A DNA stretch of 63,825 nucleotides, the filler included, from Platydemus manokwari (Eukaryota), in assembly GCA_037951405.1 (NCBI GenBank). It is 6 parts of 6 records of this genome, joined end to end, with 100 filler letters (N's around TTAATTAATTAA, not from the genome) between each part and the next. Parts side by side here need not be neighbours in the genome. Positions count along the whole stretch, not along the records: positions 1 to 9,976 come from JBBMOY011182656.1; 5 more parts are not named here. One strand, written 5' to 3'. The translations under genes were made by a program, and so were the position numbers. The notes under the pieces are model-generated. The model was not told the DNA's origin and ran no database searches. It saw nothing but the letters and a program-made list of their open reading frames with translations. Below are positions 1,714-24,584 of the stretch, piece after piece; positions within the stretch are counted from its first letter, which is position 1, and the number at the start of each line of letters is the position of its first letter.

Positions 1714-4700
1714 ATGGCCAAAATTGTGGTAGCAGGTGATAAAGTTAGCTTATTTAATAAGATTTAATTTCCTCTAAAGGTTGTTCCGATTGTCCTTATT
1801 TTGCAAAAGTAGAATTATTAGCAGATAGATTAAAAATAAATGTTCCAAATTTCCATGTACATAAAATTGTTAAAGATCGGAAAGAATGGAGTGTAATTAA
1901 TTTATTTTTAGATCAACGTAAAACATTAAATTATTTTAATTAAGGCATGGATAATAGAACTATCCAAGTCTAACAATTGGAATGTGAAAGATTCGCCAAT
2001 AATATGGAGAGAATTAGTTGACAGAGGCGGTAAAGGGCATTTAATCGGAGGTCCAAATGAATTTCAAGAATATGTGAGATGCTACTACAGTATCATATCA
2101 GATTTAACATCCAATCAAATGCAAGACATTGCCGAAGACAATATTCGTTTCAAAGAAGACGAAGATCGTGAAAACCGAGAATTCAAAGCCCTGTCAACAC
2201 CGACGAAAGTCTGCATATCTGGTGCTATCAATGATTCCGTACCACATTTCGTGATATCTTTAGCACGAGGAGATGTACTGAGTAAAAATACCGAACTCTC
2301 TATCGTGTTTCTTGACAAAACCATCAGTCTGCCAGCATTGAAAGGTCTCCAAATGGGCACATTCGATTTGGCATACCCGCTCGTAAGATCGATCTCGATC
2401 ACAGATGATTATGAAGCCGCTCTGATTGACAGTTCTCTGGTGATTATATTCGATGAAATGAACGATTATAACGTTGATACCCACGATGAGTTCATGAGAG
2501 ATTCCCAGGAATATTATGAATACATTGGAAATGTGATTGAGAAATACTGTCCATCCGATGTCAAAGTGCTTTTGGTGCCAACGACAACAAAGAACTTCAT
2601 CAATATCAATCTGATCTCCATGCATCGAATGTTGCAAAGAATTCCCAAATTCAACGTCGTCGGATTGTCGAGACCGGTCGAACAGCAAGTGCGTTCCGTT
2701 ATCGCTAAAAAACTGTCCGTCAATCCGTCAAACATTCACAACATCATTGTGTGGGGCAATATTGGCGGCAAAACATTTTTCGATTTAACAAACAGTCGAG
2801 TGCACCAATACGATGGATCGGTAGTGGGGCCCGAACCGTATTCGTTGCCGGTGGAGAAGACGATCTGGGACAAGAAATGGTTGAAGAATGAGATGGATAA
2901 TTTGGTGTCACGACGATTTAGAGAGATATCGGAATTGCGTGATCAGATTGGTAATCCATTGGCATTGGCATCGGCAATCAGCACATTTCTCAATCAATGG
3001 ATCAATGGTGATGATAATGGTTATATCCATTCATTGGTCATTTCGTCTGAAGGTTGGTATGAAATACCGGAAGGAATGGTGTTCTCGATGCCAGTGACAT
3101 TGAATCCCAAAGGTTATTGGACGGTCGTTCAAGATATTGAGTTATCAGAAACTCAATTCAAGAGGATAAATGAGTGTGTAGAGGTATAGGGCTATATTAT
3201 TGGTTTATATTATAATTAGGATTTCATTTAATATGTCTCCTCATTGATTATTATTCTCGTCGATCTCATTGGTGGTGGGCTGAAATTCTTTGATAAAATT
3301 AAACACATTTCCTTCAATCTGTTTTTTATTGTCTATTAATTTTTTTTTCTTTTTTTTCTTTTTCTTTTTCTTTTTTTAATAAATCAATAAATATATCGCA
3401 TATCATAGATTATATCGGTACGATATTCTTTACAACGTGATTTATAATGTCATTCTCAAAATTTTATTGGTCTTCTCTTGAATAATTGCCATTATTCTCT
3501 CATTAATCGATTGTTTTATTTGATAATTTTCATTAATTTTTCTGGAATTTTATTTATATTTTCTATTTATTCATTGACAAATTCATTGATATGTGCTTAT
3601 TTAAATAGTGAATTATGTTTTAATGATCAAGTATTTTATTAATTCTATATTATTTCAAATGATACCTCTAATGTTCGCAATTATTCCAACAAAATGATTT
3701 TTATTCAAATAATTATCGGACATACACACTACAGTATTTTTCGGACTATAAGGCACATCCTAAAAAATGAACTTTGTGTAGAATATTTTCACAAATAAGG
3801 CACATCAATGAATTGACTGATTAATATATTAAATTAACTTAACAATATATTACATGATTTAATGTTACTCATCATCTAAAATGTCACATTTGCTTATACT
3901 GACATCATCACCATCTTTTTACTATATTTTAGCATTAATAAATCTTTTAATCACTGTTGAAGCTTTTACTTCCATCAATGGTTCCACAATTCCCTGGCAC
4001 AATGTGGAATATATTGCTCTTCGCTGTCTCATTTCTTGCTCTCTTCTGCTATCCAATTTCCCCACTTCAATCTAAACTTCGACTTAAATTGTCTATTGGC
4101 AGTAATGTCCAGTAGCTCTAAAAACTCCGTAAGACCACAAGGAATAACTGCTAAATTTGAATTAGTGTTCATATTTTCATAATAACCAAAGATTTATAAA
4201 TTTTATGAAAAATAATTTTTTACATAAGGCTCACTGGATTATAATGCGCACCTTATAGTTCTTATAATCCAGAAAATACGGTAATTTTGGCACAACGTTA
4301 TTTTAAATCAAACTATATTTTATTTAAAAATAATACGATGTTTAATTTAATCCATTTCAACCAAATCTCGAGCTCTGATGTATTTTTGATGTTAAAAATT
4401 ACAATCTTTAATGACAAATATTATTTAAGTAAAAAATCCTTTGCTAAATATTAATATTGTTGTGTGATGTGCAAGATCCATTTTGGATTTTGGCATGATC
4501 TCCATTATTTGAATAAACTCGAATATTAATAAAATAATATCAAACAGACATAAAATAATTTAAATATCGTGTTTAAACTTGATAGGAGATTGTAAAAATC
4601 TCAATTCGACAAGGAAATTCTTGTTGTATGTCATAGATATTGTTCAATTTATAAATTAATTTTTCAATCATGAACTTATTCTTCAGGATATCAATCAAAA

Positions 4701-6382
4701 TATCCAAATGCTCTATCCATGGATGTATAACAATAATTCTGCAGGTATGGCTGTTAAATATTTATTTGAAAATTATATAAATCATTTTGTCTTATTAAAG
4801 TCGTTTCTATAAATTTTCAATGTGGAATTGTGATTCCTACTGTTGATTTATATTTATATATCTTAAATCGGTGGTGTTAAACATATAATGTGAAAAGTTC
4901 CCATCAATAAACATCCACTTTACAGTGAAATGGATTACATTCCAGAACTGTTGAGATTTTCAATATTCATTCGTTAAATCTAAGTTTTTAAAATTATTGA
5001 CTTTAGCTATTTCATAAATGATTTTCAATATAATATGCCATGAGAGGATTATAAGACTTTGCTGATTGAACCATTTACTATGCGTCATGTTAGTTCTCTG
5101 ATCGACATGTTTGGTACTCATTTCTGCTTATTAGTATCAAATAAGACCTCGAATTTATTCATTCGCACATTGACTTATTAAAATCCACAACTATTTTACT
5201 CAACTTGAATGATGTAAGCCGCTACTATTTTAGAAAAAGTTAGCATTGAAAACGACTGAAAAAGTCACGACACAAAATTTTATAGTTAATTGCAGTTATT
5301 TAAACAAAGTAATATCTTTTGATATTAATCTATAAAGAATTTTAAATTTTAAAATCCTGACATCCCTCCTTTCAGTAAAATATTTGATTTTCTATGCATT
5401 CCTAATAAACTCTTTATATTTTCTTTATGTCGTCTCTACATCTTTTTCATTTCTTCACTTTATGTTATCTATATCGTCTATATAACGTCTCTATATCTTC
5501 GTTATATCATTATCATTTCCTCCTCCTTCTCTCCTATATTTTCATGCCATGGGCCTTCTTAAAATCAAATCCAAAATGTTTGATAGCCTTGTGAATGGCT
5601 ACTATTTTATAAAACACGTACTGAAAACGACTGGATATTATCTTTGAATCTATATTGGGATATAAATTTAATCGATGCAAAAATCATTAAATCGTTCGAA
5701 AATTAATTTTAAATGTGAATTACCAGCTTAGAAGACAATTACAAATCGATCCGACAATCATTCATAAAATTTCATAAACTAATAACCCCATGATGAAATA
5801 CTTCATCAGAAATACGTCTTATAGATCCAAATATAATATATTAATAAACATGGGACAATTTTCATTTGTTTTGTGCTATTAATTATATCAAATTCTTCAT
5901 TATATTTATTATTCTAGTTGAATATTGTTAAAAATATTTATTTTCTATAAAATATTATTTTAGAAATGGTAATAGATGAAGCATTTATCGATAGTCAGAT
6001 ATACGCATTGATGCAAGAAGTTTATCCCAAAGAAGAATTGTTATCAATACGAAATTTAATCAATAATTCCTTGAATCTCGATGAAAAAGTAGAAATCAGT
6101 CGGAGCAAAGAATTGCTAATATCAACAGTTGATGATCTTCAAAGGCCGCCTGCAATGAAGTCAACGGCCATTGAGAACAATGTTGAGTTGGAGACCAATC
6201 AAAACGAGCAGGAAAGATCAGAAATTATTGATCAAACTATTGATGAAACAAACGAAGAACCGAATGATAACTCTGAAGAAGAAAACAATAATATTAACGA
6301 GGACAATGATGATTTCGAAGATAATGACAATTCGGAAAATAACAGTGTTGATCAATTGAAAGAAGATGAAGACGAGGATTAA
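1714..6382 (+). CDS. MDH1B: Malate dehydrogenase 1B-like protein; exons 1714-1735, 1780-1892, 1945-3183, 4687-4744, 5964-6382
   Basis: Spliced N-terminus [37 protein letters not shown] and [20 protein letters not shown] match the MDH1B N-terminal domain. MDH-like core follows ([25 protein letters not shown]). All five exons have GT-AG boundaries with compatible phases. The last two exons (acidic tail) are inferred from phase continuity. Confidence 0.9.
3732..4281 (-). mobile_element. pogo/Tigger-type non-autonomous DNA transposon in MDH1B intron 3
   Basis: TIRs CAGTATTTTTCGGACTATAAG ... CTTATAATCCAGAAAATACGG, TA on both flanks. Minus-strand residue [21 protein letters not shown] resembles the C-terminus of pogo DDE transposases. 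Confidence 0.75.
5213..5640 (-). mobile_element. TRIM-like miniature LTR element, copy 1 (3' LTR 5213-5362, partial 5' LTR about 5590-5640)
   Basis: On the minus strand a PPT GAAAGGAGGGA abuts TGTCAGG...CTTACA, with a purine-rich interior. Homologous to 14221-14375, 34937-35096 and 55296-55924. Confidence 0.65.
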
Positions 6383-8255
6383 ACAAGAAACAAAATTATT
6401 TCTATAAAATGGCCTTTATTTGATACATTTTTCACAGAGTACAACAACTAATATATTGGATTAGTAAATGTATTCTTTTGAAATTATCAATATACATATA
6501 TATTTATGTATTTTGTTTTAATGGAGTCATATTCATATATTACACCGGAACCGTTGTTAAATAAATTCTAACAGAATCACAAAAATGATATCACATAATT
6601 TTCTGAGAAAGTTCTTAAACCAAACGGTACCATTGGTGATTATTGTTTGTCATTTCCTATATTAGCAATATATGAATACGTGTGAGCTAAAGCCATTTTC
6701 ATCTCTCAAATTGGCTTGTAAATACCGTTATCACAAAATATATTCTGATATTCAATATTTCACATCCGAGCTCCAACATGAATAAGAAATCTATTTGTTT
6801 CTTGAAACCCTAAAAAGTGAATATTATCGTCGAATTTAGCAATGTTGAGTACATAAAACAGAAAATGTTAGTCTCAAATAGAATGAAACAAATAAATAAG
6901 TTCTTACAATGATTGTTTTCTCAAATACCTGTGTTTCCTTGTAATTTATTGTGCTCTTTTATAGTAAGTAGTCAGTGTTTATTATTCTTGAGTAATGCTT
7001 AAACAAGTTCTTCTCACTCGCACAGTCTTCTGGTTCTCCTAGTATTAGAAAAGTCATAAAGTTCATTAAGTTTGTTTGTAACTCTTGCTGTCATGATAGC
7101 ATGAGAATTATGAACAGTTATCTACTTTTATTGGAAATCACTCATCAACATTTTGAGATATTACAAGATGAAGCTTTTTAATGAATTTTTTGGTCGATGG
7201 AATTGTTTGATCTGTGGTTTATTACTATTATGAACTTTTATTCTATATTTATCTTATATTTATATCATAATTTATTTTATTTATCAATAATATGTTTCTG
7301 TCAAATCATCTTGAGAGTGCTATATTTCTCGATCGAGAATGATAACATTAGGTCCCATCTGACTTTGTTAACTTTTCAGGAAATCACACAGGAAACATAA
7401 AAATACCACATCACACATTCGTTATTTGTACTGATTGTACCGCGTCATTAAATAAACTTCGGCGCCATTGTTGTTATTTCTATATCAGTAGCTAGGGTAT
7501 GTTGGAGATTTATGTTGCTGAATTATTTCCAAAAAATGCGGGTTTTATTTTGCTTATTATCACTGTCGTCTTGATTAGTTCATTTTAGTTCTCATTAAGG
7601 GCACGGGTGTAACCTACTTTACTGTAATATTTTTAGCTTCTCAAAATTAAAATTTGTATTAACTAAAATAATATGCTCGAAGTCTCAATAATGTTATATA
7701 TGCTAGTATTTAATATATAAATACAGAATTAAAACAAAATTAAATAATAATGTTTATTCAATTCGAACATATAATTTAAAAGACAAAATTGATTTATAAG
7801 GGGTAGCCTAGTGCGTACGCTCTTTCGCACCCTAAAATATGACAATATAAGGTAAAATAAAATATCGTTACCATATTTTATAATAAATTTTTCAATTTGC
7901 GCAGAAATTTTTATTTTTGTGTAATTTTGAATAATATTTTTCAATTATTTATACTAATTGATAATATGTACTTCATATAATAAATATAATTAATAAATAT
8001 TAAATTATAATTAATTCATTTTTTAATTCACGTAGCTCAATCTGTAATCCATTATGAATTGGATTTTCATTCTCCCATGGGATTTATTCTGACGACAGTA
8101 ATGCGTGGAAATCTATTACCTGTAAGCTTTTCAAAATTCCGTCGGGCTCTGCGTGAATTTTTAGCCATAACATAGTAATCCTGGGTTTTGGGTTACTTGA
8201 TAATTTGGTCTCAAAATTATTATATAAACAGGTGGTTAATTTCTATATATCTTTT

Positions 8256-8315
8256 AGTCCTATATATCTCTGGTCCGAGACACTGATGAGGCCCACAGGA
8301 AGCCGAAATAGGACT
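8256..8315 (+). ncRNA. Hammerhead ribozyme 1 (type III fold; alternative type I fold extends to 8326)
   Basis: AGTCCTAT-A|TATCTC-tggtcc-GAGACA-CTGATGA-GGC-ccacaggaa-GCC-GAA-ATAGGACT. Complete CUGANGA/GAAA/UH core, 8-bp stem III, stem II, and stem I with one mismatch. Confidence 0.85.
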
Positions 8316-8381
8316 CTATATGTATCATAAAACTACCATCATCATCATTGTAGCTATCGTTCTTGAAGGTTCCGAGGAATC

Positions 8382-8439
8382 GTCCTATATATCTCTGAAT
8401 CAGGATACTGATGAGGCCTATGGAGGGCCGAAATAGGAC
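8382..8439 (+). ncRNA. Hammerhead ribozyme 2 (type III)
   Basis: GTCCTAT-A|TATC-tCTGaatCAG-GATA-CTGATGA-GGCC-tatggag-GGCC-GAA-ATAGGAC. Complete core and three stems. Loops differ from copy 1 while pairing is kept. Confidence 0.9.
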
Positions 8440-9976
8440 TATTTTTCAACAAAATGAAGTTAATTTATTTATTTGTTGTATCTTGACCACTTAACAATAA
8501 TAACAACAACAAATCTCTACGCAATTCACAAAGAAAATCATTCAAGATGGGATCAGTACTCGAAAGTGAAAAACAAAATAAAGAATAATCACAAAGACTA
8601 AATACTGAAATCACATATAAGCTAAGCACTGACAGGAATCCGTGGAACTCAACCTCTTTTGTAGACAGATCGACACATGTGTTTATCGGGTTTGCGTGTA
8701 ATAACTCTTTTTAGGGTTTTTCATTGGTTCTAGTGACCCTTTAGACTGATTTGTGAAATACACAACAGTTGTTAATTACTCCTATTATATCTACTTTATA
8801 ACTAAAAATTAAAAAATTTGGGTTTAAACAATAATATACATTAATATTAAATAAAAACAAAAATAATAAAATTAAAATAAATAATAATATAATAATTTAT
8901 GGGAATTGCCTTTGGATAAATTTTGATTTTGATCTTATCAATTCCAAAGAAGATTATGATTTATATGATCCTTTGACAGCATTGGGGAAAAATCAATTCA
9001 CGAATGAACAGAGCTCGATAAATAGAAATATTATAGATGTCAAGACATGATTTTAGAATGTTCTTAACAATTAGGCTTTAACTTAATCTTCCAAAGATGA
9101 AAACTGGATATAAACAGACTTTTATCACCGGAACGTTACAATCTTTTCTCTTCTATGAAATTATGGAATCTCGGTATCATGTATTTCCTTAATTTTGTCC
9201 ACTGTTACTGTCTGTGAAGACTTATATGGGAATGACTTGATGAATCACTTGTAGAAAGAAATTAACGAAGATAATTTTTGATGTGCATTCGCTTTCTCTG
9301 AGCAATAATTTTAAATTAGAAGTTAATCCAATAATCAACATCAAATCGTCCTTGAACGAATGAAAATATAGATAAATTTTAACCGACCCAGTAAATCGGG
9401 AACTGCTGCCAAAAGTGAATTTTTGACAATTGTTGGGATAGCATGGAACGTCTAGTGCTGTATTCAGATAGTGAAGAGAGCGAAGACGAAAAAACTCCAT
9501 ATGCCATTAAGTCCTACAATGAATGGAGACACAACAGCAGCTGTCCCAGAAACCACAATTACCACCACAACAACAACCACCAAAATCCCACAACCATCAA
9601 CGAGCAGTCATGTGTACAAAAAACCAAGAACACCCCAAAGGCCGGGTACACCAATAGGTAAGAAACCTGAGACAATAGTGATAAAACCCATATAACCGAG
9701 CCCAAAAAGGGAAACATGGGCTACCCAAAGCTAGTGCGTGGATTTAGACGCTTGATGTCAGCAAGGATTAAGCGGAACTGCGAGTTTGAAATCAGAACAG
9801 CCAGTACCATCCAGTAATCAATCCAATAATGACTTATATCCTATTTTTTACATTAATTTTGATTTGATCACAATCTGGACCAGATATTTTATTGATATTT
9901 GATCAAATACTGATATTTTAATATGAATTGTGAATTTTTGTAATTATCTTGATTTCAATATTTTGAGAATTTTTGT

Positions 9977-10076
9977 NNNNNNNNNNNNNNNNNNNNNNNN
10001 NNNNNNNNNNNNNNNNNNNNTTAATTAATTAANNNNNNNNNNNNNNNNNNNNNNNNNNNNNNNNNNNNNNNNNNNN
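9977..10076. other. Artificial contig spacer (also 22419-22518, 32131-32230, 44668-44767, 54426-54525); 10-N gap at 25205-25214
   Basis: Identical N44-TTAATTAATTAA-N44 design; the linker gives stop codons in all six frames. Confidence 0.97.
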
Positions 10077-10812
10077 AAGTATCCTATTTAAAGAATTTTA
10101 CATAAGCGTAGGTGTATAATAATAATTTTGAAATCTCTTTAATCTTTATCCTTAATTAATCCACCACAATCCATTGAAAATTACGATTGAAAAACTTATT
10201 GTACAACAATAATGAATTGTAAGCCATCAGAATAAATGTTAATAAACAAATTAAATTGTTTACAATAAATAAACAAAAATAGGTAGATGCACTGATAGAA
10301 ATTGAAGGTTTCTAACGATTAAGACGAAATAAACCAGAATCCGTTTCTATTCAGTGGAGAGAGGTCTGCAAGGATTACGAATCATTGTTTTATTCAAGAT
10401 TTTTTTATTAAGAAAAGACAGATAATTGAATGAATGAATGGATTGATAATATAATTGAATATTTTCTCCTTTTATGCATCATTTTCATTGTTTTTTTTTA
10501 TCATTTTCTTATATTTTATAATGAATGTCATTCACCTTTTATCCTTCAATATTTCAATTTTTGTCTACAAAATCAAACAAAACCATATCTTCACGAATGC
10601 TTTGTCCAACAGAAAAATCAACAATTCGTTTTTCGTTTATTATTTTTGTTCTTTTATTGATAATAATTCTTAGCATCGGTATTGATTTTGTTTTCGGCAT
10701 CAAATATTATTGAAAAACCGATAACCAACTGACCAATAGAAATATGGGGTTGTTGCGTTAACGGTCATAATTGCAGATGATTAAGTTAGAGTATGACACA
10801 AAACAATCTGAA

Positions 10813-10826
10813 GTTGCCATGGCAAA
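10813..10826. promoter_or_regulatory. Near-perfect RFX X-box palindrome
   Basis: GTTGCCATGGCAAA matches GTTGCCATGGCAAC at 13 of 14 positions. Target gene not identified. Confidence 0.45.
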
Positions 10827-13800
10827 ACAAACGATTCGGTGTCATTGCATTTTAGTTTTGAAATTTTGAACTCGGAGCATGGACATACATATGGTTTTCA
10901 TTATTTTAATAAAGGCCACGAATTAAAATCATGAACCTTCGTTTCATTGGCGATTTGAAAAGCGAACAAACACAAACGTTTAATTGTGCGAAATAAATGA
11001 AACCAGAAACCTTTACGAGTTTAAAATGGAACTGAGTGATTTACCGTTGAAAAATGAATCCGGCCATTGACGGATTTGTTGATATTGCTCATTCATATCC
11101 ATTTTTCTTCGCACATTAAAAGTCAAAATAAAACAAAAAAAACAATAATCAACGACAATCATTCGACTCAGAATGTCATTAAAAGCAATTCTGTCGATTT
11201 TGTTTTGTTGCAAAATTATCGCTACTGTTTTAACCGTATCTCAGCGGTTGGATCAATTGAATTTGTGGTTTTGATATTCTATTTTTCCATGATATTCTAC
11301 TGATAACTATTACACAACTGTCACACAAACAGAATATTGATTTGGATTTCGTGGATTTTTTCTCCAAAATTCTACTGGTAATTATCGGAATCCATGTTTT
11401 TATCGTTTAGAAATGAAGTTCAATTCTAATTTGGAATGAATGGCGAAGAAGACAACAATACGGTGAAGCACAGAACTATTTAATATTAATATTAATAAAT
11501 CAATAATTGATTAAAATAATAATAATAATTAAAATAATAATGATAATAATAATAATTGCAATAATAATACCAACTATTGTGCACTCATAGCAAGTTCATT
11601 AAAACACAGTAAAATACAGACCGATTGGTTAACGCCTACGTTTTCAGTTGTATTCTACTCAATTGTCACATTTTTTTTAACCACTACTGATATTTAGTAT
11701 ATTTTTGTCATGATTCATTGGCATGCTGCCAATTTTATTTTAATTCAACTTACTTTGTACGGAATTTCTCGATATTTAATGTCACATATTTATTGAGGTC
11801 ACAACAATAATTTTATGGGAGAAATTTGTTTTCGACTTTATTTTATTTAATAAACGATCAGGACGAGATGAATTGCAAGATTGGATGTGATGGTGAAGAA
11901 TGAGTGGTTTTTCGATTATTGAAATGAAATTTATTTTTGAAGTAGCACAAATATGGCGTTCGAAATCATATTCGTTTCCCACAATTATGGCAACAGTGTT
12001 TTCATTCATATTTATATCGAGAGAGAAAGAGACAGAGATATCGTTCGATGGGTAATCTTATTAAAATGAGCGAAATTTTGTTTCAAATATTCCACGAATA
12101 ATTAAGATGATATATGTTATTTGATTTGTGCTGGATTATTTTCAATATTTTCCTTATCTTTGACTTTATAATGGAACAAAATATTGATTGATTATATTGT
12201 CGAATTCCGACACTTCTATTTACCTCGATGATAATATAATTATAATCATTATATCATAATATTATCATATATTTACATTATTGATAATAATAGCAGAAAT
12301 AATAATTTGTTAGTGAAAGCGGTAATAATAATATAATTGTTAATAATATTTTACAGCACCAAAAAATCATAATATTAATAAACTAATGATTATAAGACTT
12401 ACGAGGGTTTCCTGATGAGGTCATTAGCCATGATTTGATGTAGTTCACCAACGGAACTGTTTCGCTATAAAAATACCTAAATCAGAAATAATACTACTGG
12501 TTATTATTATCACTGTTATTATTATTATTATCATCATTATAATACTACTAACAGTATTTATAATAATCTTCATAATAAGTATTGCAATTCGAACTTTAAC
12601 TTTAACCTTTGGACAGACAGTCATACCAAAAATGAACTGTTGTAAGAAATCATTTTTTGTGATTACTTTGCAGTAAAGGAAATTATCCAACCTGAAATAA
12701 CCCAAATAATTTGCTGTGAATCAGGATTGAAATCATCAATGAGACAAATAAATTTCGATTTTTAACCAATTGTGTTAACAAAACCCACAATACTAAATTT
12801 ATTAGTCTACTCAAATACTAATAACGTCAATCAATGACTATTGTGCTTGTACAGACATGTATTTTTTCATTCACTAGCTAACACAGAAAGTGACCTAATT
12901 ACCACAATTTTTTCACTCCCACATAATAATTAAAATCACTTCAAATATTCGATAATAACCACATATAAATAATTCTTCCATGATAAAATGCATTTGTGCC
13001 ATTCATTGTAACGATCATATACAGTGATAATACAGTGATAATATTCTTGAAATCTACAATCCAAATTATAGGATGTTGAAATCGCTCATTCGGTCACATC
13101 ACACATTAAAATAAATTGAAAATCTGATAGGTTATCAAATCCAATCGATCATGAATGTGTATGCATTGACACGAGATCATGATAATCTCTTTGGAAGTTT
13201 TCGATCTCATATCGAAGATCGATTTAAATCAAGATTAATTTCTGGAATATTTTTATGAGATATGAACTGAAATATAAAAAATCGCAGTTATCCTGGTTAA
13301 TGAGGTCAGCAAAAATGAGTTTTTGTTCTTATTTAAGAGAAAAGACCATCACAAAATCGTTAACAAGAATCATAGCAGAGAAATTGAGATGAATATACAA
13401 AATAAAAAGCAAGGATTTACTAGTATTATCGATCGATATTGTTTCAAAGAACTTCAACCCGGTTGAGTTGCAATAAATGCCTATTTTAAATTTATCCTAT
13501 CATTAAAAATCGAGATAATCGAAATATGAATACCATTTATATGATGAAGAAAATGACAGAAATATCTATGACAGAAATTCTAAAGTACCCTCATAAAACT
13601 TGTCACGAACTCATATTTTGGGATATTGCAATCATGGTTTAAGTACTTGGGTTTTATAGGAATGGTACAAAGGATAGTCTAAACTTAATTATCCAGAAAT
13701 GCGTCATCACTAGTTTAAACTACCCGCAATATTAGTTTTTCATCAAGTATTTCATAAAAAATTACCAACGAAAGTCTAAATAATTATTCTCAACATCTAA

Positions 13801-13879
13801 TTTATTATCCAATCTGCCATTTCTCAAGATGGCTGTGCCGAAAATAAATGTCTTTATTGATTCAATAAACTGTCACCGC

Positions 13880-14375
13880 TGCGAGGATTTAAAAATTGAA
13901 ATTTAGAAATCTTTTGTAAATTAATACTAATTTTGTTTAAATAATTGTTTTTAAATTGACAATTAGTTGTCGCGACTTGACACCATTGTGAAGGTTTAAA
14001 AATTTGGATTCAATTCTGAGAATTTCTATGACATGGAAGTATAAAATAGGTGAAGATAATTAAAAGATGTTTAGAAGATAAACAGAAAACAAAGAAGATT
14101 CGACGAAGATTTAAAGAAGAAAGAGGAAATCGAAACTTTTGTTTTGGTAAAGATGTGGGAAATTTGATACAGAAATATTTAGGAATACATAGAAGATCAA
14201 AAATTTTAAAGAAAGGGGGATGTGGGGATTTCACAATTTAAATTTCAAAATACTTTGTAAATTAATATCAAAAGATATTGATTTATTTAAATAAATGATT
14301 TTTAATAAATGATTTGACGTCCTGACTTTTCAGTTAATTTTCAATGCTGCCCATATAAAATAGTAGCTGCTTACA
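13880..14375 (+). mobile_element. TRIM-like element, copy 2 (truncated 5' LTR 13880-about 13978; 3' LTR 14221-14375)
   Basis: PPT AGAAAGGGGGA directly before TGTGGGGATTT...TAGTAGCTGCTTACA. Purine-rich interior. The LTR start recurs at 13880. Confidence 0.65.
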
Positions 14376-15294
14376 ACGTCTATTTGGTTTTTGTTTTTCG
14401 TGCAGTGTTTAGTTTCTGAAATATCATTTACAGGGATTATTGTCAGCTCGAAATATTCAAAGATTCTCAAGTCTCAAAGAAAAAATACTGAAAATTTTCA
14501 AACTTATTTTAAACATTCGTGCAGGAGAGATAACTGTTTTGGAAAACCGTAAAAATATGTTTGATGATTATCGGATAATTCTTAAATTTCTTTCAAAACA
14601 ACTCAAACACTCAACTTAATGTATCACAAAGTTTAGATTTGCAGCCGCTGTTGATCGATCTTTGAATAAATTAATCCTCAGTTAAAATCGAAAACGTTTT
14701 AAAAGGTTTATAACAGATTCCGAATGTTTTAACTCGACTATTTTAAATGAAAGCTTGCCATTTCCTATAAGTAATTCTGAAATAAAGATCAATGCACATG
14801 AGAAGATATCGGGCAAAGTTACTACAAAGTTGATGAAGATCTGCTGATTGATAGTCCAATTTTGTAGTTACTTCCGCTCATTATTATTGGATATGATTTC
14901 GAAACCTACTAACCCCTGGGCTGATAGCTCATCTTTATCGAATACACTTCGACTTCAAGGCACATGACGTAATTGTTATTTATTCCATATCAGTATATCT
15001 CTTAGTAGGTACAATACTATCGATATGATGGGATTAATATTAGAATGTTTATTTGACAGTCATCATATGAATCTTTTTACGTAACAATACTGGTGTTACG
15101 TAATACCAATTGCACTACGATTACTCAATATTATAATTAATTCGATGAATTAACCTAACTCGATTAAATCAATTAAGTTTACAAAATAAATAATTAAACA
15201 ACAAGATTTTAATAAAAGTTTATTTCAATAAATATTATTTAATAATACGTCTCCTACAAAAGCAACGAATGAAGTATTAAAATCCTAATTATCG

Positions 15295-15822
15295 CCTCAG
15301 ATCTTTCGCTCAAAATCTCATAGTATAAACCACTCGTATTGGTACGCTTCCCCGACCGTAAAGTAAGTATTCTACAAAAGATTTAATGCTAAAGCGTAAA
15401 TCATAAAATACGATTCAAATATCCACATTATTTTCATAACATAGTTCGAGTTCAAATGTGTGTCTAAGCTACATCCATTAACAAATTTCTGAATAACAAA
15501 GTTGCCCTATTATGAGGTTGGCACAATTTACCAATGCATGTAGCCGACATTCAGACTTAGAACCGTTCAGTCTAAATCTATCGAATAGGAGTTTCGTTCA
15601 AGTACATTTACCATTGATCCGAATCTGTGGTTATTCTCATACTGAACAGAATTACTGTTGCAGTAACAATTATATGATAGGGTTAAACTAATCTGTCTCA
15701 CGATGACTGAACAATCCAACGCTTTGAGAATTCTGCTTCGCAATCATAGGAAGAGCCGACATCGAAGAATTTAAAAGTCCTGTCGATATGAATACTTGGT
15801 GGCAAGTAGTCAGTTATCTTGT
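15295..15822 (-). pseudogene. Decayed 3'-terminal fragment of 28S (LSU) rRNA
   Basis: Reverse complement of conserved LSU motifs: GAACAATCCAACGCTT, GAATTCTGCTTC, TAGGAAGAGCCGACATCGAAG, AAACTAATCTGTCTCACGA. The sarcin-ricin loop is mutated and about 30 nt are deleted between CTCACGA and GAACAATCC. Confidence 0.9.
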
Positions 15823-17879
15823 AAGTAAATGCAAATTATAACAAAAGAAACAAAAAATCAACCAATGAAAACCATTTCGCTTACGCAATCAGCGTAAAAT
15901 CGATGATTTAGTGCTCACAAAAATTTTTTCAAAAAATTTTTTTTGAATTTGATTCAGTATTGAAAAACCTTTTTTTGAAGAATTAATCAGAATAATCTAT
16001 TGTAAATTTTGTTCAAAAAATATCTTCCGTGATATTGCTTTTCATGTGGCGCTGTCAGGATTAAATTGATTCACTCTAAGAATGACTGTCACCTTTTTGA
16101 AAGAAAAAAGTTATTTTTGAAAGAGGTCAGATGGAGAATAGTGATATTTATCAAATATAAATTCCTTAAATTTAACCCATGAATATATATGGCTAATATT
16201 ATATTCAATAATACATTCTGAGTCTGATAAAACCGTATATTAATAAATCGATTTTTTCTTATAAGTTTATGAAATACATCTCCCAATAATGTCAAGAATC
16301 ATGAAAATGTTCTATTTTGTATTAAACACATTTTCGGGTGGACTTTTAGCACTGAATTTCGCTAAAAAAAGTGATAAGTACTCTTTCGATTCCACATATC
16401 ATAAGAGGTTTATTGATGAAATATCTTTAGGTATTTGTTAATGAGAGCTTAGGCGTTCTTCACTTGATTGTTGAAGATCACACCCACCAAGGATATAATT
16501 TCTGAGTTTCATCTAATTCAACTGACATTCGTTTCCAACAAGTTTGTTTCTTGACATGTTTTAAAGATCGCTTTAAAAGAATCTTTTATATATTTAACAA
16601 TTTATAACAAACATTGACTCCATACCAATACATGAATTTTTCTGCATTCGACTTTGAAGTTAAACTAATACCGACTTAAACAAAAGAATCTGTTCACGAT
16701 TTTGTGATATTCGATTTATTTATTCGATTTATTTCGCAAAAATTACTACGATAAATTATTCTAATACCGTGGTGTTGGTAAAATCAAAAACCGATATATA
16801 ATCACACAGATCAATAAATCCGGTTCCATATATTACATATATACCCACTTTTTGGGAATTGTTTTTTTTTTTAAAAAAACTATGGCTTTTCATCAATGAT
16901 AAATGAATAATGCTCTACAATCAAGTACTGTGTCGGCAAATTCCTCTCACTGTATTTTCCAATAAGTGTTTAATCACTACAATGTTGTCTTGAAATCTCA
17001 TAATTTCATTTAACCTTGCAAATCGATTATTTTTATTGACAATAATAACAATGTTTACAACAGAATTTTCCAAATTCTACTTGAAAAAATACTCCATGGA
17101 CAATAATGATACACACAACATCGACTATTGAAACAATTGTCATGAAACAATAAAGGAAATTAAGGAAGGAAATCCTTCTAATAATTCTCTAACCAAGTTT
17201 AATTATTGTTTTAATAAATTGGATAAGGAGAACAGTTGTTTCAATAAGTGGTTAAAAAAGCTAAAAAGTAGTAAACGCAAAACAGCACAATATGAGCAGA
17301 AGGGCTCAAAGTTCTTGGCTAATTTCGGAGGAGATAATTTCGATGTAGCTGGAATAATGAATATAATCATGGGATTGAAAATATAATTCATCTGAATCTT
17401 GTTTATATCATTTCCATTGTATATCATCGTAACCCAACATCAAATCATCATTCACCAAATATTGATAGCAATTTATTTAAATTAATCTCCATAAAAAAGT
17501 TTAATTTTTAATTTCATAAGTTTAATATTGCTTTTATCCCGTAAATTTTGTTTTTTTGTTTGTTGATACTGGATCGATTGTTCCTTTCCGCTTAAAAAAT
17601 AGTCAAGTATAAAATAAATTGATCACTCTAGTTTTATTGATTGTAACGTTGTTAACAATACACAACAATCGTGATTGATAAGTTGATATAAGATATCAAA
17701 TTCCTGTACTTCATTTTAAACCCATTTTCATCAGTTTTTAACTTGAAAAAACCGACAAATAGACGATATCGAACAAATTACTAAAAGCTGTAATCTATAC
17801 TTCGATATTTGTAAAACTACTAAATCAATAAGGGGTTTGGGTGTAATCACCCTATTTAATCAGAGCACAATCACTCAGA

Positions 17880-19240
17880 CGAGATTAAGAAACATGATTA
17901 AAGACTGCGAAGGACCTTTGGCTAAAAAATATCATTGACTAAAGATTGGTTGAGAGCCCTTCAATATTATAGGGAATAGGAATCTACCGAAGTGTCCTAT
18001 GAGAAGATAGAACAGATGCCGAACGATATTAAGTCGCATAAGGTGACCAAAGAAGATCTTTTCGCATTCCTAAAGGTTCGTTGTTCAGAGGATGCGAAGT
18101 TGGAGAAAGAAATAAAGATATAAGACATCGTCGAATTATTGAAAATTAAAATGGTAATTAAAAAGCTGGATGAAGTTCGGGAACTGAAAAATGTGAATGA
18201 TGCTGCGTCTGATGAATGGATAAAAAGATGAAAAAACCTATCATAAGTCAAAGAAGCAGGTAAGGCAAATAGAGACAAGGATGTACTACAGATTCACCAA
18301 ACCATTTCACATATCACGAAACTGTAATATCCCGAAGGTTGTAACAAGTTATACGTGTGATGAAAGGGGCAACATGGCCAGAAATCACCCAAAGTTAATA
18401 AGGTGCATTAGATGGCATTATCGAAGACATTTCGAAAAGAAAATTAAACCATTTTGGAAAAACTTAGTTGCAACAACAAGAACACATCTATTGGAGATAA
18501 GTCAAAAGTGTGGGAACTTATACTGACAATGAGTGAAACTCCAAAGTACCATTCGACGTTGTTGTGAAGACACCAAATTACAGGAATTGAGGACGAGATG
18601 TAACAGTACAAGAAACCGTCAAATTAAAGAATGAAAACTGCGTGGAGTACCCAAATGTCAAATCCCTGACATCAGGATAGTGGGTCGGAGCAATGCACTA
18701 AACAATGATGTGGATCATGTCCATGATACCGTTAATATAAATAGTCGTATTAATATTTATAATGTGTGTAATGCGAATAATAATAAAGCAATTAATAAAG
18801 ATAAGTCAAATAACATAAATAATGTACATAGTAAGAAAACAATAAAATTACAGAAAGATTAAGAGTGACTCTACAGACATAAATGAAAGAACTCAATCGA
18901 AAATTATAAAGTTTATAATTAAAAAGAACTCATACATTTGCAAAGGAGTAAGAAAATAAGAAAAAATGATATTAATATTGAAAAAATTAGAAACTTCAAA
19001 GATTTTGTTTGATAGAATACAAGGACGATCAAGCACAATTATAGGAATTCCAAATAAAGAATTTGAATGTTTACTAGATACAGGGGCAAGAATAAATGTT
19101 ATTAACAAAAGATATTAAAATTACTGGAACACTTCGATATAGAATATACTGAGGAAAGTTTACGTTGCGCAAATGATGGTAAACTGGAGGTAATTTGTAA
19201 AGTAAAGATGAAAATCGAAGCTGGAATCCAAACAAACAAT
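17880..19240 (+). mobile_element. Degenerate Ty3/gypsy-like gag-protease relic
   Basis: Eroded zinc knuckle SYTCDERGNMARNHP (about 18350) and aspartic protease motif EFECLLDTGARINVI (about 19060-19105). Many stops and frameshifts. Confidence 0.7.
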
Positions 19241-22200
19241 TATTTAAAATTCGATATGGGATGTATTTATAGATATATTTATATTTATATTCTCCATTAA
19301 GACTGGCAATAAAAGAAGCTCTCTGGAAGAGTTACATTTGTTTAAAAATGTATGGTTTGTTTTGAATATTAAAATTTAGAAAAATCTTCTAAATGAATAC
19401 TTCTAACGAATCTAAAAATTTAAACGAGGTAGCTACTACTAACCCTTTGTACATGGTGAATCTACCGAATATACTAATAATCGATTTTTTGGTTCCATAT
19501 TATTTTACTGGTTGATTTAGTTATCTCGGCTCCGAAATCATTTTATATAAGTTATTTATTAAATAGATTTGCAATTAATCATCCATGAATGGTTTTTGAA
19601 GTGATATTTATAGCATATGATAACCTTATTAACATTTGTTATCATTTATCTCAAGGTGATGAAAATAGGTTGTTGTTTTGTTAACATTGTAAACCAACAC
19701 TTTGATAACAATCATTGTGATAGTGAGATAATATTGAGTGTATTATTAATAATATTAAAAATATTAAAGAAATAATAATAATAATTTTGTCAATATTTTT
19801 TATAATCGTATAATTTCTCTTTGGCCACATTTTCTGCCTAGCTAAATGTCTTTAGTGTTAAAATTTCGACGCATTTGTGGAATATATTTGAACCTCGAAT
19901 TTCAATGTTAAATTTTTATCTCGTTCCAGTAATTGATTCAAATTAAAGAAGAAGATTTTTATCTTGATTGAGTCTCTGAATGAAGTAACGACACTAATAA
20001 AATAGATCAATCAAACTAAAGACGTTTACATATATTCAAGCAAATCTATAGTTTAGTGAAGGATATAACGGTGTCGAGGATTGTGTGGTGTTTTATAGAA
20101 AACACAAAAAGCTTAATTATTTACTTATATTTATCATTAAAATCAACTCCAATTTGATCAATGAAGTTGTTATAATCTTCGATTAATTGTGCTGAGCATT
20201 CGAAGTCATTATTGTTGTCCAATATAGATGTCAAACAAATGAATATGGTCAGTTAATATATCTCAGTTCCGAAAAATAGTGATGTTATACGAAATATAAT
20301 CTATAGTAGTTGCTGGATTTTCGTTGAAGGTGATATAAAATCAATATTGATATGAAGACAGGATTTTATTGTCTAATATTTTTGAATCGGTCAGTGGAAA
20401 TATACTTTTATTCAAGGTCAATTCTGTTAATGATACTTTGAATTTCAATTCCCGAGAAATATATGTTTCCATGAATGTATCTTTCAACAACCAAAGCTAA
20501 AGGCTTGAACGAAAATTTTTTGTTTAAATTGTCATGGATTTATTCAATCGTTAAAATAAATATCTATCCCATGATTTTTACATCACTTTGCAGGGAGACT
20601 TATTTTCCTAGAATCATCAGAACTCAACTTTTTATATATTTTAATTTGGTTGTGGAACTCATTCGAATGGTGAGTTGTCGTATTATCGAATAATGCTTTA
20701 TTGATTCCACTCTATATAGCAATTCTACTATTTCATGGTAGTTTTATGCTTCACGTACTTCAGTGTGATAAATCATTACACTTGTTTTTTTTCACACCTT
20801 TCATAATTTTCTAAATAATGTCGTTGTGTTTCATCGACAAGAAAGTTTAGAGTTTGTCTCTCATTAAGGTCAGACAATCATTGTGAACCTGGCAAGTGAG
20901 ATTTACCTTTTCAGGTAAACATGGATATTCTCTTTGTATTTTTATTGAGACCAAAGTCAATACAGTTAACTGAAGATATTTAACTGTAATGTATTATATA
21001 GGTTTGTACTACTATAACCTTGAATATATTGAATTGAAGATAAATGGACTTACGGCACTTTTGAAAATAGTGGCTCCTTTGTTATTATTGTCGCTGTCGA
21101 AATTGGTAAACATCTTTATTATCTTTTATTATGATATATTGTCTCGTGTATTTGAGATGGAATTAAACAAAGAATAAAAATTAATATAAATAATTATTCC
21201 TCGATCAATTGAAACAATCAATAAACAAAAAGTCCATTCAAAAAATGGTGCAAACAAATCGGTTTATGACATCTATCATCAATACATTTGACTGGAAATA
21301 TCGATTCGGACGACAGATCAGTATTATTATTGTATGGACAGGTTTATTATTGTATGGACACCGATCAGATATAATAAAGCATTCCCAATAAAATTTTCTT
21401 CCAAATCAAGTTTGGAATTTGTGTTCATTAGAAATTATCTGATTTTTTTGAAATTACAATTCATTGCGATTCTGGTCCATTTTTCATCTCTAAAGTAGAA
21501 TTCATCAAATAGGCCGCCATGTAAATATTCAAACTGAAAGAAGCGAACGATTTATTAACAGTTATTTCGAAATAAAATTACAATATCATTCAAGGAATTA
21601 AATTTTCTGGTCTATTAAATCAATACGATGACAACTCACACACTCACGGTTGCCTTCAATTCATTTTCCGAATCGAAAAAAGAATGGTATCTGAAATGAT
21701 TTGGAATTTTCTCATTCAACCATTTTTTGGATTATTTGTTTATGAATCCACAGTTGATAACAGTCGACTCAATTATTCAACAAAGTCACCGAAAAAATCA
21801 ATTTGAAAATATTATTTTTGCACTTGAAAATTAAATTTGAAATGGAAAAATAATAATTTGAACTATTCAATTTAGTGATAGAATTATTTATCATTTCAGA
21901 ACTAATGGAGGTTTAAAGAAATATCTCTTTATAATGATGATAATAATAGTAATAATAATGATAATACAAGTGATAATATTTTTGTAACTGTTGTTCCCAT
22001 AATATTGAAAATAATTGCTATTATGATTGTTATGATGGTTTGCCTTACGAATCTCAATAGATAATCGATCGATAGATCGGTTTTGTACTCCTTTCTAGCT
22101 ATCAATATTGCAAAGCATAACGAATCGATTATTGAAAAATTCATTGACTTAATCACTTAGGGTTACTTGATCGGTTTTTATTTTTTGTGTTTTTGGATTT

Positions 22201-23921: not shown

Positions 23922-24584
23922 GCTAGTTTAAAAAAAGGAACTACTGGTGGCATAACCCAGAAAAAGAAAGGAGGCTCTGGTGATAGGCCAGAATTAACTG
24001 ATGAACAGAAGCAAGAAGTCAGAGAAGCTTTTGATTTATTTGATGCTGATGGTTCTGGAACCATTGATATAAAAGAGCTTAAAGTTGCTATGCGTGCTTT
24101 GGGCTTTGAGCCAAAAAAGGAAGAGGTTCGGAAATTGATTTCTGATTATGACATTGAAGGAAAAGGTAATCAATTTATAATATACTTACAAAGTCCTATT
24201 TAATTATTTTAATATGTTAACTAGTAAAATTTTGATTTATAAATTAGAGAATATGTTTTTGAAACTTATTATTTAAATTTTAAATCAAAATATAATAATT
24301 CCAATTTAGGTACCATTGAATTCAGTGATTTTCTTAGCATGATGACTCAGAAGATGGCAGATAAAGATACAAAAGAAGAGATTTTAAAAGCTTTTAAACT
24401 ATTTGACGATGATGAAACAGGAAAAATATCGTTTAAAAATTTGAAAAGAGTAGCAAAAGAATTAGGTGAAAATTTAACCGATGAAGAATTACAAGAAATG
24501 ATCGATGAAGCAGATCGAGATAATGATGGTGAAATTAATGAACAAGAATTTTTACGAATTATGAAAAAGACTAATTTGTACTAA
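23922..24584 (+). CDS. CETN2: Centrin (CETN1/2 type); exons 23922-24165 and 24310-24584, plus an upstream ATG-only exon (candidate ATG|GTGAGA at 23572-23574)
   Basis: [46 protein letters not shown]...[31 protein letters not shown]...IMKKTNLY. Four EF-hands; phase-1 intron 24166-24309. Confidence 0.95.

What the first reader, a model, noticed from the sequence alone, without database searches (positions are those of the whole stretch)
8256..8439. Tandem hammerhead ribozymes predicted to excise a 125-nt RNA (mini-retrozyme-like)
Seen: two complete hammerhead cores in direct orientation, each with an identical perfect stem III (GTCCTAT/ATAGGAC). Loops and stems I/II have diverged yet still pair, which suggests selection on structure. 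Predicted cuts after A8264 and A8389 release a 125-nt monomer. Known: tandem HHRs define retrozymes and Penelope-like pLTRs and give circular RNAs; metazoan examples are mostly type I, while type III is typical of plant retrozymes and viroid-like RNAs. Inference: a small type III ribozyme retroelement or circRNA unit in an animal genome.
Basis: partly seen in the sequence, partly recalled or inferred. Interest (0 to 1): 0.85.

Follow-up and report, generated by a model that had tools for sequence, protein, structure and literature searches.

The report
Twin hammerhead ribozymes in LTR-like repeat
Two complete type III hammerhead self-cleaving RNA motifs, 125 bases apart, lie near the end of an old 805-base mobile element with the ends of a retrotransposon LTR in an animal genome; this plant-"retrozyme"-like design is hardly described in animals, but cleavage is untested and most copies have decayed.

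Summary
Window 8256-8315 and 8381-8440 each carry a complete type III hammerhead: CUGAUGA, GAAA, an A15.1-U16.1 pair, H17 = A, stems I and II closed, stem III open. Predicted cuts fall after A8264 and A8389. Chance expectation is 0.01 per window.

The pair is not a free-standing 125-nt tandem unit. It is a module inside an 805-bp non-coding interspersed repeat (7692-8496) with TGTTA...TAACA ends and a 4-bp target-site duplication (ATAA here; P = 2e-11 over 24 copies). A related copy of the surrounding repeat shows the empty site. The genome holds at least 150 such ribozymes, always paired about 125 nt apart.

Copies are old (median 10% from the column majority) and decay neutrally. Only 6 of 42 keep both cores. 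In the window copy both cores are intact but the helices are weakened.

The two paralogous ribozymes differ by one compensatory pair and two wobble shifts, so both were well formed in the ancestor. No second LTR, PBS, PPT or internal region was found, and no RNA data exist. The 125-nt segment is not viroid-like in fold.

Best reading: a relic of an LTR-retrozyme-like element in a probably spiralian animal. It is a new variant of a known kind.

The parts
7688..7691 (.). Left copy of the 4-bp target-site duplication (ATAA)
   Evidence: The same tetramer follows the element at 8497-8500. The related copy of the surrounding repeat in L013 has a single ACAA at the empty site.
7692..8496 (+). 805-bp non-coding interspersed element with LTR-like ends (TGTTA...TAACA); it carries the ribozyme pair
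   Evidence: Homology to at least 40 other contigs starts at 7692 and stops at 8496. Twenty-four copies with both ends give 6 perfect and 11 three-of-four TSDs (P = 1.8e-11). X1 contigs join 7673-7688 directly to 8495-8502, which are empty sites. No ORF of 80 aa or more.
8221..8229 (+). TATA-like box (TATATAAAC), 33 nt upstream of the first base of HHR1
   Evidence: Sequence. TATAAA is kept in 22 of 30 copies. Its role as a promoter is inference only, because the element is AT-rich.
8256..8315 (+). Hammerhead ribozyme 1, type III; predicted cut between A8264 and U8265
   Evidence: Family model R1 scores 74.8 bits; Rfam HH3 scores 12.7 bits. 15 of 17 helix pairs are intact.
8265..8389 (+). 125-nt segment between the two predicted cut sites (3' part of HHR1, 65-nt spacer 8316-8380, 5' strand of HHR2 stem III)
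   Evidence: Spacing is 117-126 nt in every contig with two hits. It is not more stable than shuffles.
8381..8440 (+). Hammerhead ribozyme 2, type III; predicted cut between A8389 and U8390
   Evidence: R1 scores 83.2 bits; Rfam HH3 scores 16.6 bits. 16 of 17 pairs are intact, but a competing hairpin is predicted.
8441..8496 (+). 56-nt 3' tail of the element ending in CTTGACCACTTAACA
   Evidence: The 18-mer end occurs 136 times at up to 1 mismatch, against 7 for the reversed control.
8497..8500 (.). Right copy of the target-site duplication (ATAA)
7635..8760 (.). A different, more abundant repeat into which the element inserted (7635-7691 and 8497-about 8760)
   Evidence: Summed contig depth in X1 is 5,000-24,000 there, against about 11 for the unique flank 7400-7634. 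L013 aligns across the empty site.

Best explanation
The two motifs are real type III hammerhead ribozymes of the canonical kind: helix I of 6 bp with a 6-nt loop, helix II of 4 bp, an RUH cut site and a GAAAY box. They form a fixed twin module near the 3' end of an 805-bp non-coding mobile element that has the hallmarks of an LTR (TG...CA ends with a 5-nt inverted TGTTA/TAACA, and a 4-bp target-site duplication). The family amplified long ago in this animal genome, and all copies seen now stand alone, like solo LTRs. Most likely mechanism (inferred, by analogy with plant LTR retrozymes): transcription starts in the element upstream of HHR1, and the ribozymes cut the transcript co-transcriptionally after positions 8264 and 8389. 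This leaves 5'-OH and 2',3'-cyclic-phosphate ends. In a two-LTR progenitor these ends would delimit a unit-length RNA fit for ligation and reverse transcription by a helper LTR retrotransposon, and the 125-nt piece would be a by-product. Shown here: the motifs, their copy number, the fixed spacing, the element's borders and TSD, its age and its neutral decay. Inferred: self-cleavage, the promoter, LTR status and the retrozyme-like cycle. The window copy keeps both catalytic cores but has weakened helices, so it may cleave poorly or not at all.
For: Complete cores and three-helix junctions are present in both motifs, against 0.01 expected by chance. At least 150 hits of 59-89 bits to the family model are found in the genome, always in pairs about 125 nt apart. 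In well-kept copies the hammerhead fold is the MFE structure (L023, L038). HHR1 and HHR2 differ at pair 1.2/2.2 by G-C versus A-U, plus two U.G/U-A shifts, with no disruptive fixed difference. Against two independent hammerheads of the same architecture (a single-copy one in this genome at 44.6 bits to Rfam HH3, and one in a metagenome contig), 12 of 17 pairs change on both sides with 96% of cells paired. Borders are sharp at 7692 and 8496. The 4-bp TSD has P = 1.8e-11 and an empty site exists. The architecture matches the published description of typical type III HHRs of plant retrozymes (PMC7936874). Plant LTR retrozymes are also non-coding, have 4-bp TSDs and carry a promoter upstream of the HHR within the LTR (PMC4918200 as cited in 10.64898/2026.07.22.740005; PMC12029980). 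The contig carries an MDH1B-like gene whose named relatives are all animals, with molluscs and a nemertean best at about 41% identity.
Against: No copy with two LTR-like units, no shared internal region, and no PBS (TGG within 5 nt of the end gave 0 hits) or PPT was seen among 55 3' junctions and 32 5' junctions. LTR status therefore rests on the termini and the TSD alone. Rfam HH3 scores lie far below the gathering score. There are no RNA data, so transcription and cleavage are unproven. Copies decay neutrally: pairing is 87.1% against 86.9% in shuffles, cores are intact in 19 and 18 of 42 copies, and both are intact in 6. The closest pair of copies differs by 8.7%. The 125-nt segment is not self-complementary. 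Plant retrozymes have one HHR per LTR and are GC-rich; this element has two per unit and is 20-37% GC.
Confidence: 0.6

Rival explanations
1. One reading: the 125-nt unit is itself a miniature retrozyme. The two ribozymes excise it, it circularises, and it spreads as a small circRNA.
For: Two cut sites 125 nt apart, with spacing conserved across copies. After ligation, cutting at both sites leaves one complete chimeric ribozyme. Animal retrozyme circles of 170-400 nt are known (PMC7229834).
Against: Only the ribozyme is duplicated; the flanks of the two copies are unrelated, so there is no 125-nt tandem repeat. No arrays of three or more ribozymes appear among 150 hits. The unit that inserts, with a TSD, is 805 bp. 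The circle folds no better than shuffles in 8 copies. 125 nt is below any described retrozyme or viroid-like RNA in the papers read here.
Confidence: 0.08
2. Ribozyme-delimited R region: HHR1 and HHR2 mark the U3/R and R/U5 borders of an LTR (U3 573 nt, R 125 nt, U5 107 nt). An RNA cut at HHR1 in the 5' LTR and at HHR2 in the 3' LTR would carry a 125-nt terminal redundancy for strand transfer. The ribozymes would thus replace the start site and poly(A) site in defining the genomic RNA.
For: The segment sizes are typical of U3, R and U5. A TATA-like box lies 33 nt before HHR1, so the expected start site falls at the HHR1 edge. Both ribozymes are retained together in most copies, which a cycle cutting at both sites would not preserve. 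Single-ribozyme variants lacking exactly one unit exist, as expected if both sites are sometimes cut (L067, L071, L079; joint 8314 to 8441).
Against: Purely inferential. It needs differential cleavage of identical modules in the two LTRs. No two-LTR copy, PBS or PPT was found. The single-ribozyme variants are equally explained by unequal recombination between the two 59-nt repeats.
Confidence: 0.1
3. The 805-bp unit is a complete stand-alone non-autonomous element moved as DNA or cDNA by an integrase-type enzyme (for example a Ginger-like DDE transposase or an LTR-retrotransposon integrase acting on its TGTTA/TAACA ends). The ribozyme pair is cargo that releases a small RNA.
For: All of about 55 junctions are solo. 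The TGTNR-type termini and the 4-bp TSD fit integrase-family enzymes (my own knowledge of Ginger1 elements, not tested here). Another repeat (L056) shares the terminal 15-mer.
Against: No terminal inverted repeat beyond 5 nt. No helper was identified. Solo LTRs commonly dominate old families.
Confidence: 0.12
4. Chance resemblance, or a motif that never cleaved.
For: Rfam HH3 scores are below threshold, and there is no experimental or RNA evidence.
Against: 0.01 expected against 2 seen. There are hundreds of copies with the full core. In well-kept copies the hammerhead fold is the MFE structure. A compensatory difference separates the paralogs and there is covariation with independent hammerheads.
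Confidence: 0.03

Closest known systems
Plant LTR retrozymes (Cervera, Urbina and de la Pena 2016, PMC4918200; NbRZ1, PMC12029980)
   Same: Canonical type III hammerhead inside an LTR-type unit. Non-coding. TG...CA-type ends and 4-bp TSDs. The promoter lies upstream of the ribozyme within the same unit. Many solo or decayed copies.
   Different: The host is an animal. Two ribozymes sit 125 nt apart in one unit, instead of one per LTR 600-1000 nt apart. No second LTR, tRNA-Met PBS or PPT was found. It is AT-rich (20-37% GC against over 55%). The excised segment is not highly self-paired.
Animal non-LTR retrozymes and Penelope-like element pLTRs (PMC7229834; bioRxiv 10.64898/2026.07.22.740005)
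   Same: Animal genomes, low GC, ribozymes in direct repeat a few hundred nt or less apart, non-autonomous and non-coding.
   Different: Those carry type I hammerheads in true tandem repeats of the whole unit, lack LTR features and have longer or no TSDs. Here the hammerheads are type III, only the ribozyme is duplicated, and the element has LTR-like ends with a 4-bp TSD.
Type III hammerheads reported in animals: HDV-like circRNAs of toad and termite, termite and dipteran genomes, Drosophila pseudoobscura (PMC7936874); discontinuous HHR in mammalian Clec2 3' UTRs (PMC6155905)
   Same: Type III topology in metazoan sequence.
   Different: Those are atypical, with long helices I and II and a Watson-Crick pseudoknot, or a split helix I. 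They are not described as LTR cargo. The present ones have the canonical short-helix plant and subviral architecture.
Schistosoma Sm-alpha / Sj-alpha SINE-like elements with a hammerhead (PMC2770079 and references therein)
   Same: A short interspersed non-autonomous element of a spiralian animal carrying a hammerhead at high copy number.
   Different: Those have a single type I ribozyme in a SINE-type element, with no LTR-like termini.
Tandem hammerhead arrangements in bacterial and phage transcripts (PMC3088659)
   Same: Several hammerheads in one transcript that cut out defined segments. A metagenome contig (L094) even has the same stem III and AUC site.
   Different: Those lie in a prokaryotic operon context and are not mobile-element LTRs.

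Membership tests
Hammerhead ribozyme, type III | Conserved core C3 U4 G5 A6 N7 G8 A9, G12 A13 A14, A15.1-U16.1 pair, H17 not G | tested here: met
   Both motifs are complete. In the window H17 is A in both. Most copies have C in HHR1.
Hammerhead ribozyme, type III | Three helices around the core, with helices I and II capped by loops and helix III open | tested here: met
   In well-kept copies the MFE structure is the hammerhead fold. Architecture is 6 bp + 6-nt loop, 4 bp + 7-nt loop, and 7-8 bp for stem III.
Hammerhead ribozyme, type III | Rfam RF00008 gathering score (48.5 bits) | tested here: not met
   12.7 and 16.6 bits. The model prefers a GUC site and a short GC-rich stem III. A custom model links the motifs to a 44.6-bit RF00008 hit in the same genome.
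Hammerhead ribozyme, type III | Covariation supporting the helices | tested here: inconclusive
   None among genomic copies. One compensatory pair and two wobble shifts separate HHR1 and HHR2. 12 of 17 pairs covary against independent hammerheads, but on a model-fitted alignment.
Hammerhead ribozyme, type III | Site-specific self-cleavage; loop 1-loop 2 tertiary contacts | not testable with these tools
   No RNA run holds the locus.
LTR retrozyme | Type III hammerhead embedded in an LTR | tested here: inconclusive
   A type III HHR lies inside a unit with LTR-type termini, but the unit has not been shown to be a terminal repeat.
LTR retrozyme | Two direct LTRs flanking a short non-coding core with a PBS and PPT | tested here: not met
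   No second unit within 1.5 kb in about 60 loci. No shared flanks. No TGG within 5 nt of the 3' end. The fragmented assembly limits this test.
LTR retrozyme | 4-bp target-site duplication | tested here: met
   6 perfect and 11 three-of-four among 24 copies, P = 1.8e-11; empty site seen.
LTR retrozyme | Accumulation of a self-paired circular RNA | not testable with these tools
   No RNA data. The 125-nt segment is not self-paired.
Non-LTR retrozyme / Penelope-like pLTR | Type I hammerhead in tandem repeats of the whole unit; association with RT and GIY-YIG elements | tested here: not met
   The topology is type III. Only the ribozyme is repeated. No such ORF in the window. Type I hammerheads exist elsewhere in the assembly.

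The most novel reading that the evidence does not exclude
An animal lineage of LTR retrozymes with canonical plant-type type III hammerheads. In it a pair of ribozymes brackets an R-like 125-nt segment and so defines the ends of the element's genomic RNA, that is, ribozyme-delimited U3-R-U5. If true, LTR retrozymes are not a plant speciality. Their origin would then be either ancient or by transfer between kingdoms, as de la Pena and colleagues have speculated (PMC7761336).
Probability: 0.12. Interest if true: 0.85.

Novelty: new variant of a known kind. Interest (0 to 1): 0.55.

Why it matters
The literature read here assigns type III hammerheads and LTR retrozymes to plants and type I non-LTR retrozymes to animals. 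The few animal type III examples are structurally atypical and are not tied to LTR-type elements. A high-copy animal repeat with LTR-type ends, a 4-bp TSD and two canonical type III hammerheads blurs that division. It gives a concrete family in which to test whether ribozyme-processed LTR elements exist or existed in animals. It also bears on where plant retrozymes and viroid-like RNAs came from. The twin arrangement is a natural 'ribozyme-flanked cassette', a design otherwise known mainly from engineering. The value is limited by three things: the copies are old and decaying, activity and expression are untested, and the host species is unidentified.

Tried and rejected
- **Rfam scans.** The whole window at E <= 1 gave nothing. 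Only a narrow scan showed weak HH3 hits.
- **RNA evidence.** The single run found (X1) is contigs of unknown kind, almost certainly the DNA source, so it says nothing on expression, read ends or circles.
- **Relatives elsewhere.** An exact ribozyme pattern found nothing in metagenome or viral contigs. A looser pattern found one unrelated GC-rich, phage-like hammerhead.
- **PBS and internal region.** The end-plus-TGG pattern gave 0 hits. Clustering the flanks of 55 and 32 junctions found no sharing except 'family B'. Family B (L065, L070, L073) is a 2.7-kb non-coding repeat with a nested 5'-truncated fragment, not an internal region.
- **L056.** It shares the terminal 15-mer and has a PPT-like AAGGGGGGA, but it is only a partial duplication. 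I did not follow it further.
- **12-mer end search for more flanks.** The background was too high, with controls of 62 and 74 against 86 and 90.
- **Species identification.** The assembly holds four different intact COI genes. The COI protein search returned only unnamed metagenome fragments. I therefore claim no more than 'animal, MDH1B closest to molluscs and a nemertean'.
- **tRNA or SINE origin.** ARAGORN found nothing. The A-box-like TAGCCTAGTG motif has no B box.
- **Terminal inverted repeats.** None beyond 5 nt.

Full report
**What is there.** The stretch 8256-8440 contains two complete hammerhead motifs on the + strand.

HHR1 reads as follows:
- Stem III is 8256-8263 paired with 8308-8315, and the unpaired H17 is A8264.
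- Stem I is 8265-8270 with 8277-8282, capped by the 6-nt loop 8271-8276.
- CUGAUGA is 8283-8289.
- Stem II is 8290-8293 with 8301-8304, capped by 7 nt.
- GAA is 8305-8307, and A8308 pairs with U8263.

HHR2 has the same plan: stem III 8382-8388 with 8433-8439, H17 A8389, core 8408-8414, and GAA 8430-8432.

Stems I and II are closed and stem III is open, so the topology is type III. A scan I wrote for this architecture finds no other complete motif on either strand. The partial pattern CTGATGA-N12-18-CGAAAT occurs twice, against 0.01 expected. The two 59-nt copies are 80% identical and exactly 125 nt apart.

Rfam's Hammerhead_3 model gives only 12.7 and 16.6 bits against a gathering score of 48.5, and only when a short stretch is scanned. 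The motifs use AUA or AUC cut sites and a long AU-rich stem III, which that model scores poorly.

**The pair is a module of a larger mobile element.**
- A search of the window's own assembly (911 Mb, 2 million contigs) with 8230-8460 gave 455 candidates. The 40 that were scored are 83-89% identical.
- Aligning the window to those loci shows that homology begins sharply at 7692 and ends at 8496.
- The 805-bp unit starts with TGTTA and ends with TAACA. It has no inverted repeat beyond those 5 nt and no internal direct repeat other than the ribozyme. It has no ORF of 80 aa or more.
- In the window it is flanked by ATAA on both sides (7688-7691 and 8497-8500).
- Over 24 copies with both ends readable, the 4 bases before and after the element are identical in 6 and match at 3 of 4 in 11. 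That is 63 of 96 positions against 32% for mismatched pairings (P = 1.8e-11).
- The flanks belong to another, more abundant repeat. A related copy of it in L013 runs straight across the insertion point with a single ACAA. Contigs of the only public run that holds the locus join 7673-7688 directly to 8495-8502.

So the 805-bp unit is a discrete insertion made by an integrase-type mechanism. TG...CA ends plus a 4-bp duplication are the signature of LTR retrotransposons, and of plant LTR retrozymes as described in the papers read (10.64898/2026.07.22.740005, citing PMC4918200).

**Family anatomy.**
- A covariance model built from 34 ribozyme copies with intact cores (R1) finds at least 150 hits of 59-89 bits in the assembly, which is the scoring cap.
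- Whenever a contig has two hits, they are 117-126 nt apart in the same orientation.
- There are no arrays of three or more and no other spacings.
- A few copies have a single ribozyme and lack exactly one unit (L067, L071, L079; joint 8314 to 8441).
- The 3'-terminal 18-mer occurs 136 times at up to 1 mismatch, against 7 for the reversed control.

**Age and selection.**
- In a 42-copy alignment of the ribozyme region (A1), copies differ from the column majority by 5.6-22% (median 10%; window copy 9.2%). The closest pair differs by 8.7%. G/C sites, and CpG most of all, decay fastest.
- Cores are intact in 19 of 42 copies for HHR1, 18 of 42 for HHR2, and 6 of 42 for both; the window copy is one of the six. 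This is about what neutral decay at these rates predicts.
- Pairing in the helices is 87.1%, against 86.9% after shuffling partners.

It does hold between the two paralogous ribozymes. By their commonest states, pair 1.2/2.2 is G-C in HHR1 and A-U in HHR2. Two further pairs switch between U.G and U-A. No fixed difference breaks a pair, while the loops and H17 differ. This is one compensatory event, not many.

Two independent hammerheads have the same architecture but different helix sequences. One is a single-copy motif in this assembly that scores 44.6 bits with Rfam HH3. The other lies in a GC-rich metagenome contig. Aligned with family members, 12 of 17 pairs change on both sides and 96% of cells pair. 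That alignment is fitted to the model, so it leans towards the structure.

**State of the window copy.**
- HHR1 keeps 15 of 17 pairs. A8266.C8281 in stem I and C8293.A8301 in stem II are broken. Its MFE structure is still hammerhead-like.
- HHR2 keeps 16 of 17 pairs. However, two substitutions create a 5-bp hairpin (AUCAG/CUGAU) that sequesters part of the core. This fold is predicted at -21.2 kcal/mol, against -15.8 for the hammerhead fold.
- In well-kept copies (for example L023 HHR1 and L038 HHR2) the hammerhead fold is the MFE structure.

The locus may therefore cleave weakly or not at all. The ancestral element had two well-formed ribozymes.

**What kind of element.** The architecture is helix I of 6 bp with a 6-nt loop, helix II of 4 bp, an RUH site and a GAAAY box. 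A published description gives this for typical type III hammerheads of plant retrozymes and subviral RNAs. It contrasts with the long-helix, pseudoknotted type III variants found so far in animals (PMC7936874).

A TATA-like box (8221-8229, TATAAA kept in 22 of 30 copies) lies 33 nt before HHR1. This would place a start site at the edge of the ribozyme, as in the tobacco retrozyme LTR, where the mapped start lies upstream of the ribozyme (PMC12029980). In an AT-rich element this is only suggestive.

Against full membership in LTR retrozymes:
- No second unit lies within 1.5 kb in about 60 loci.
- Among 55 3' junctions and 32 5' junctions, no flanks are shared except a nested fragment in a 2.7-kb non-coding repeat.
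- No TGG lies within 5 nt of the 3' end.

All copies seen thus behave as solo units. The very fragmented assembly would hide large elements but not 1-2-kb ones.

As a circle, the segment folds no better than dinucleotide shuffles in eight copies (z +0.2 to +1.7; linear z +1.56).

**Host.** The same contig carries a 401-codon MDH1B-like ORF (1984-3189). Its named relatives are all animals, with molluscs and a nemertean best at about 41% identity, and one unnamed protein matches at 73%. The assembly contains four different intact COI genes (65-85% amino-acid identity), so it is a mixed sample. The COI search returned no names. I can say 'animal, probably spiralian', but no more.

**Mechanism proposed.** Most likely (about 0.6), this is the LTR, or an LTR-derived unit, of an extinct retrozyme-like non-autonomous retroelement. 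Its transcripts were trimmed by the ribozymes, and the 125-nt piece was a by-product of a duplicated ribozyme.

Less likely readings:
- A ribozyme-delimited R region, with U3 573 nt, R 125 nt and U5 107 nt. This would explain why both ribozymes are kept together.
- A stand-alone element moved by an integrase-family enzyme.

Chance is excluded for practical purposes.

- No RNA data were available, and the one run laid is contigs only.
- The element is of LTR type in an animal genome, so I built no full-length consensus or repaired copy and singled out no copy for revival. The alignment tool prints consensus lines on its own, and I used them only to describe column majorities in the ribozyme region.

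Noticed in passing
window 7635-7691 and 8497-8760: The element sits inside another, far more abundant repeat. Summed contig depth in run X1 is 5,000-24,000, against about 11 for the unique flank. Many empty-site versions are present.
   Followed up: partly
window 1984-3189 (+): A 401-codon uninterrupted ORF resembles malate dehydrogenase 1B (Ldh_1_C). Best named hits are molluscs and a nemertean at about 41% identity, and one unnamed protein matches at 73%.
   Followed up: partly
G000 contigs C1514745, C1389203, C1344449, C1440324 (L090-L093): Four different full-length COI genes (65-85% amino-acid identity, all with TGA read as Trp) are present. The assembly therefore mixes several organisms or holds diverged mitochondrial copies.
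   Followed up: partly
L095:1501-1557 (-) = G000:C1153215:4691-4747: A single-copy type III hammerhead lies in AT-rich non-coding DNA. It has the same architecture (7-bp stem III, AUC site, 6 bp + 6-nt loop, 4-bp stem II) but different helix sequences. It scores 44.6 bits with Rfam HH3 and has no other copy in the assembly.
   Followed up: partly
L096:796-850 (-) = G000:C1699800: Another type III hammerhead, with a GUC site (43.6 bits to Rfam HH3), lies on a 1.6-kb contig of 51% GC, possibly from a different organism in the sample.
   Followed up: no
G000 contigs C380834, C127192, C756161, C1100308, C51764: Five type I hammerheads score above the Rfam gathering score on very short contigs. The usual animal type also occurs in this assembly.
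   Followed up: no
L094:881-941 (-), metagenome contig Ga0163161_10082017: A GC-rich type III hammerhead lies between ORF-like stretches. It has the same stem III and AUC site as the family (partly forced by the search pattern) but different stems I and II.
   Followed up: partly
window 7800-7832: Inside the element there is a GC-rich island with a perfect 12-nt palindrome (GTGCGTACGCAC in most copies) next to a tRNA A-box-like TAGCCTAGTG. There is no B box and no tRNA call.
   Followed up: partly
L065, L070, L073 (L087:497-3228): A 2.7-kb non-coding repeat with at least 3 copies carries a nested fragment of the element (positions about 654-805, one ribozyme). The breakpoint coincides with that of an internally deleted copy (L064: 1-146 joined to 661-805).
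   Followed up: partly
L056:1186-1700 (G000:C58902) and G000:C519997: A different repeat ends with the same 15-mer (CTTGACCACTTAACA). It is followed by a short spacer containing AAGGGGGGA and then TGTTAGGGATT, which looks like an LTR-to-LTR junction. It could belong to a helper element.
   Followed up: partly
A1 alignment, rows win, L006, L051: A minor subfamily has HHR1 partly converted to the HHR2 state (A at H17 and at 1.2). L006 also has the compensating U at 2.2, while the window copy does not.
   Followed up: partly
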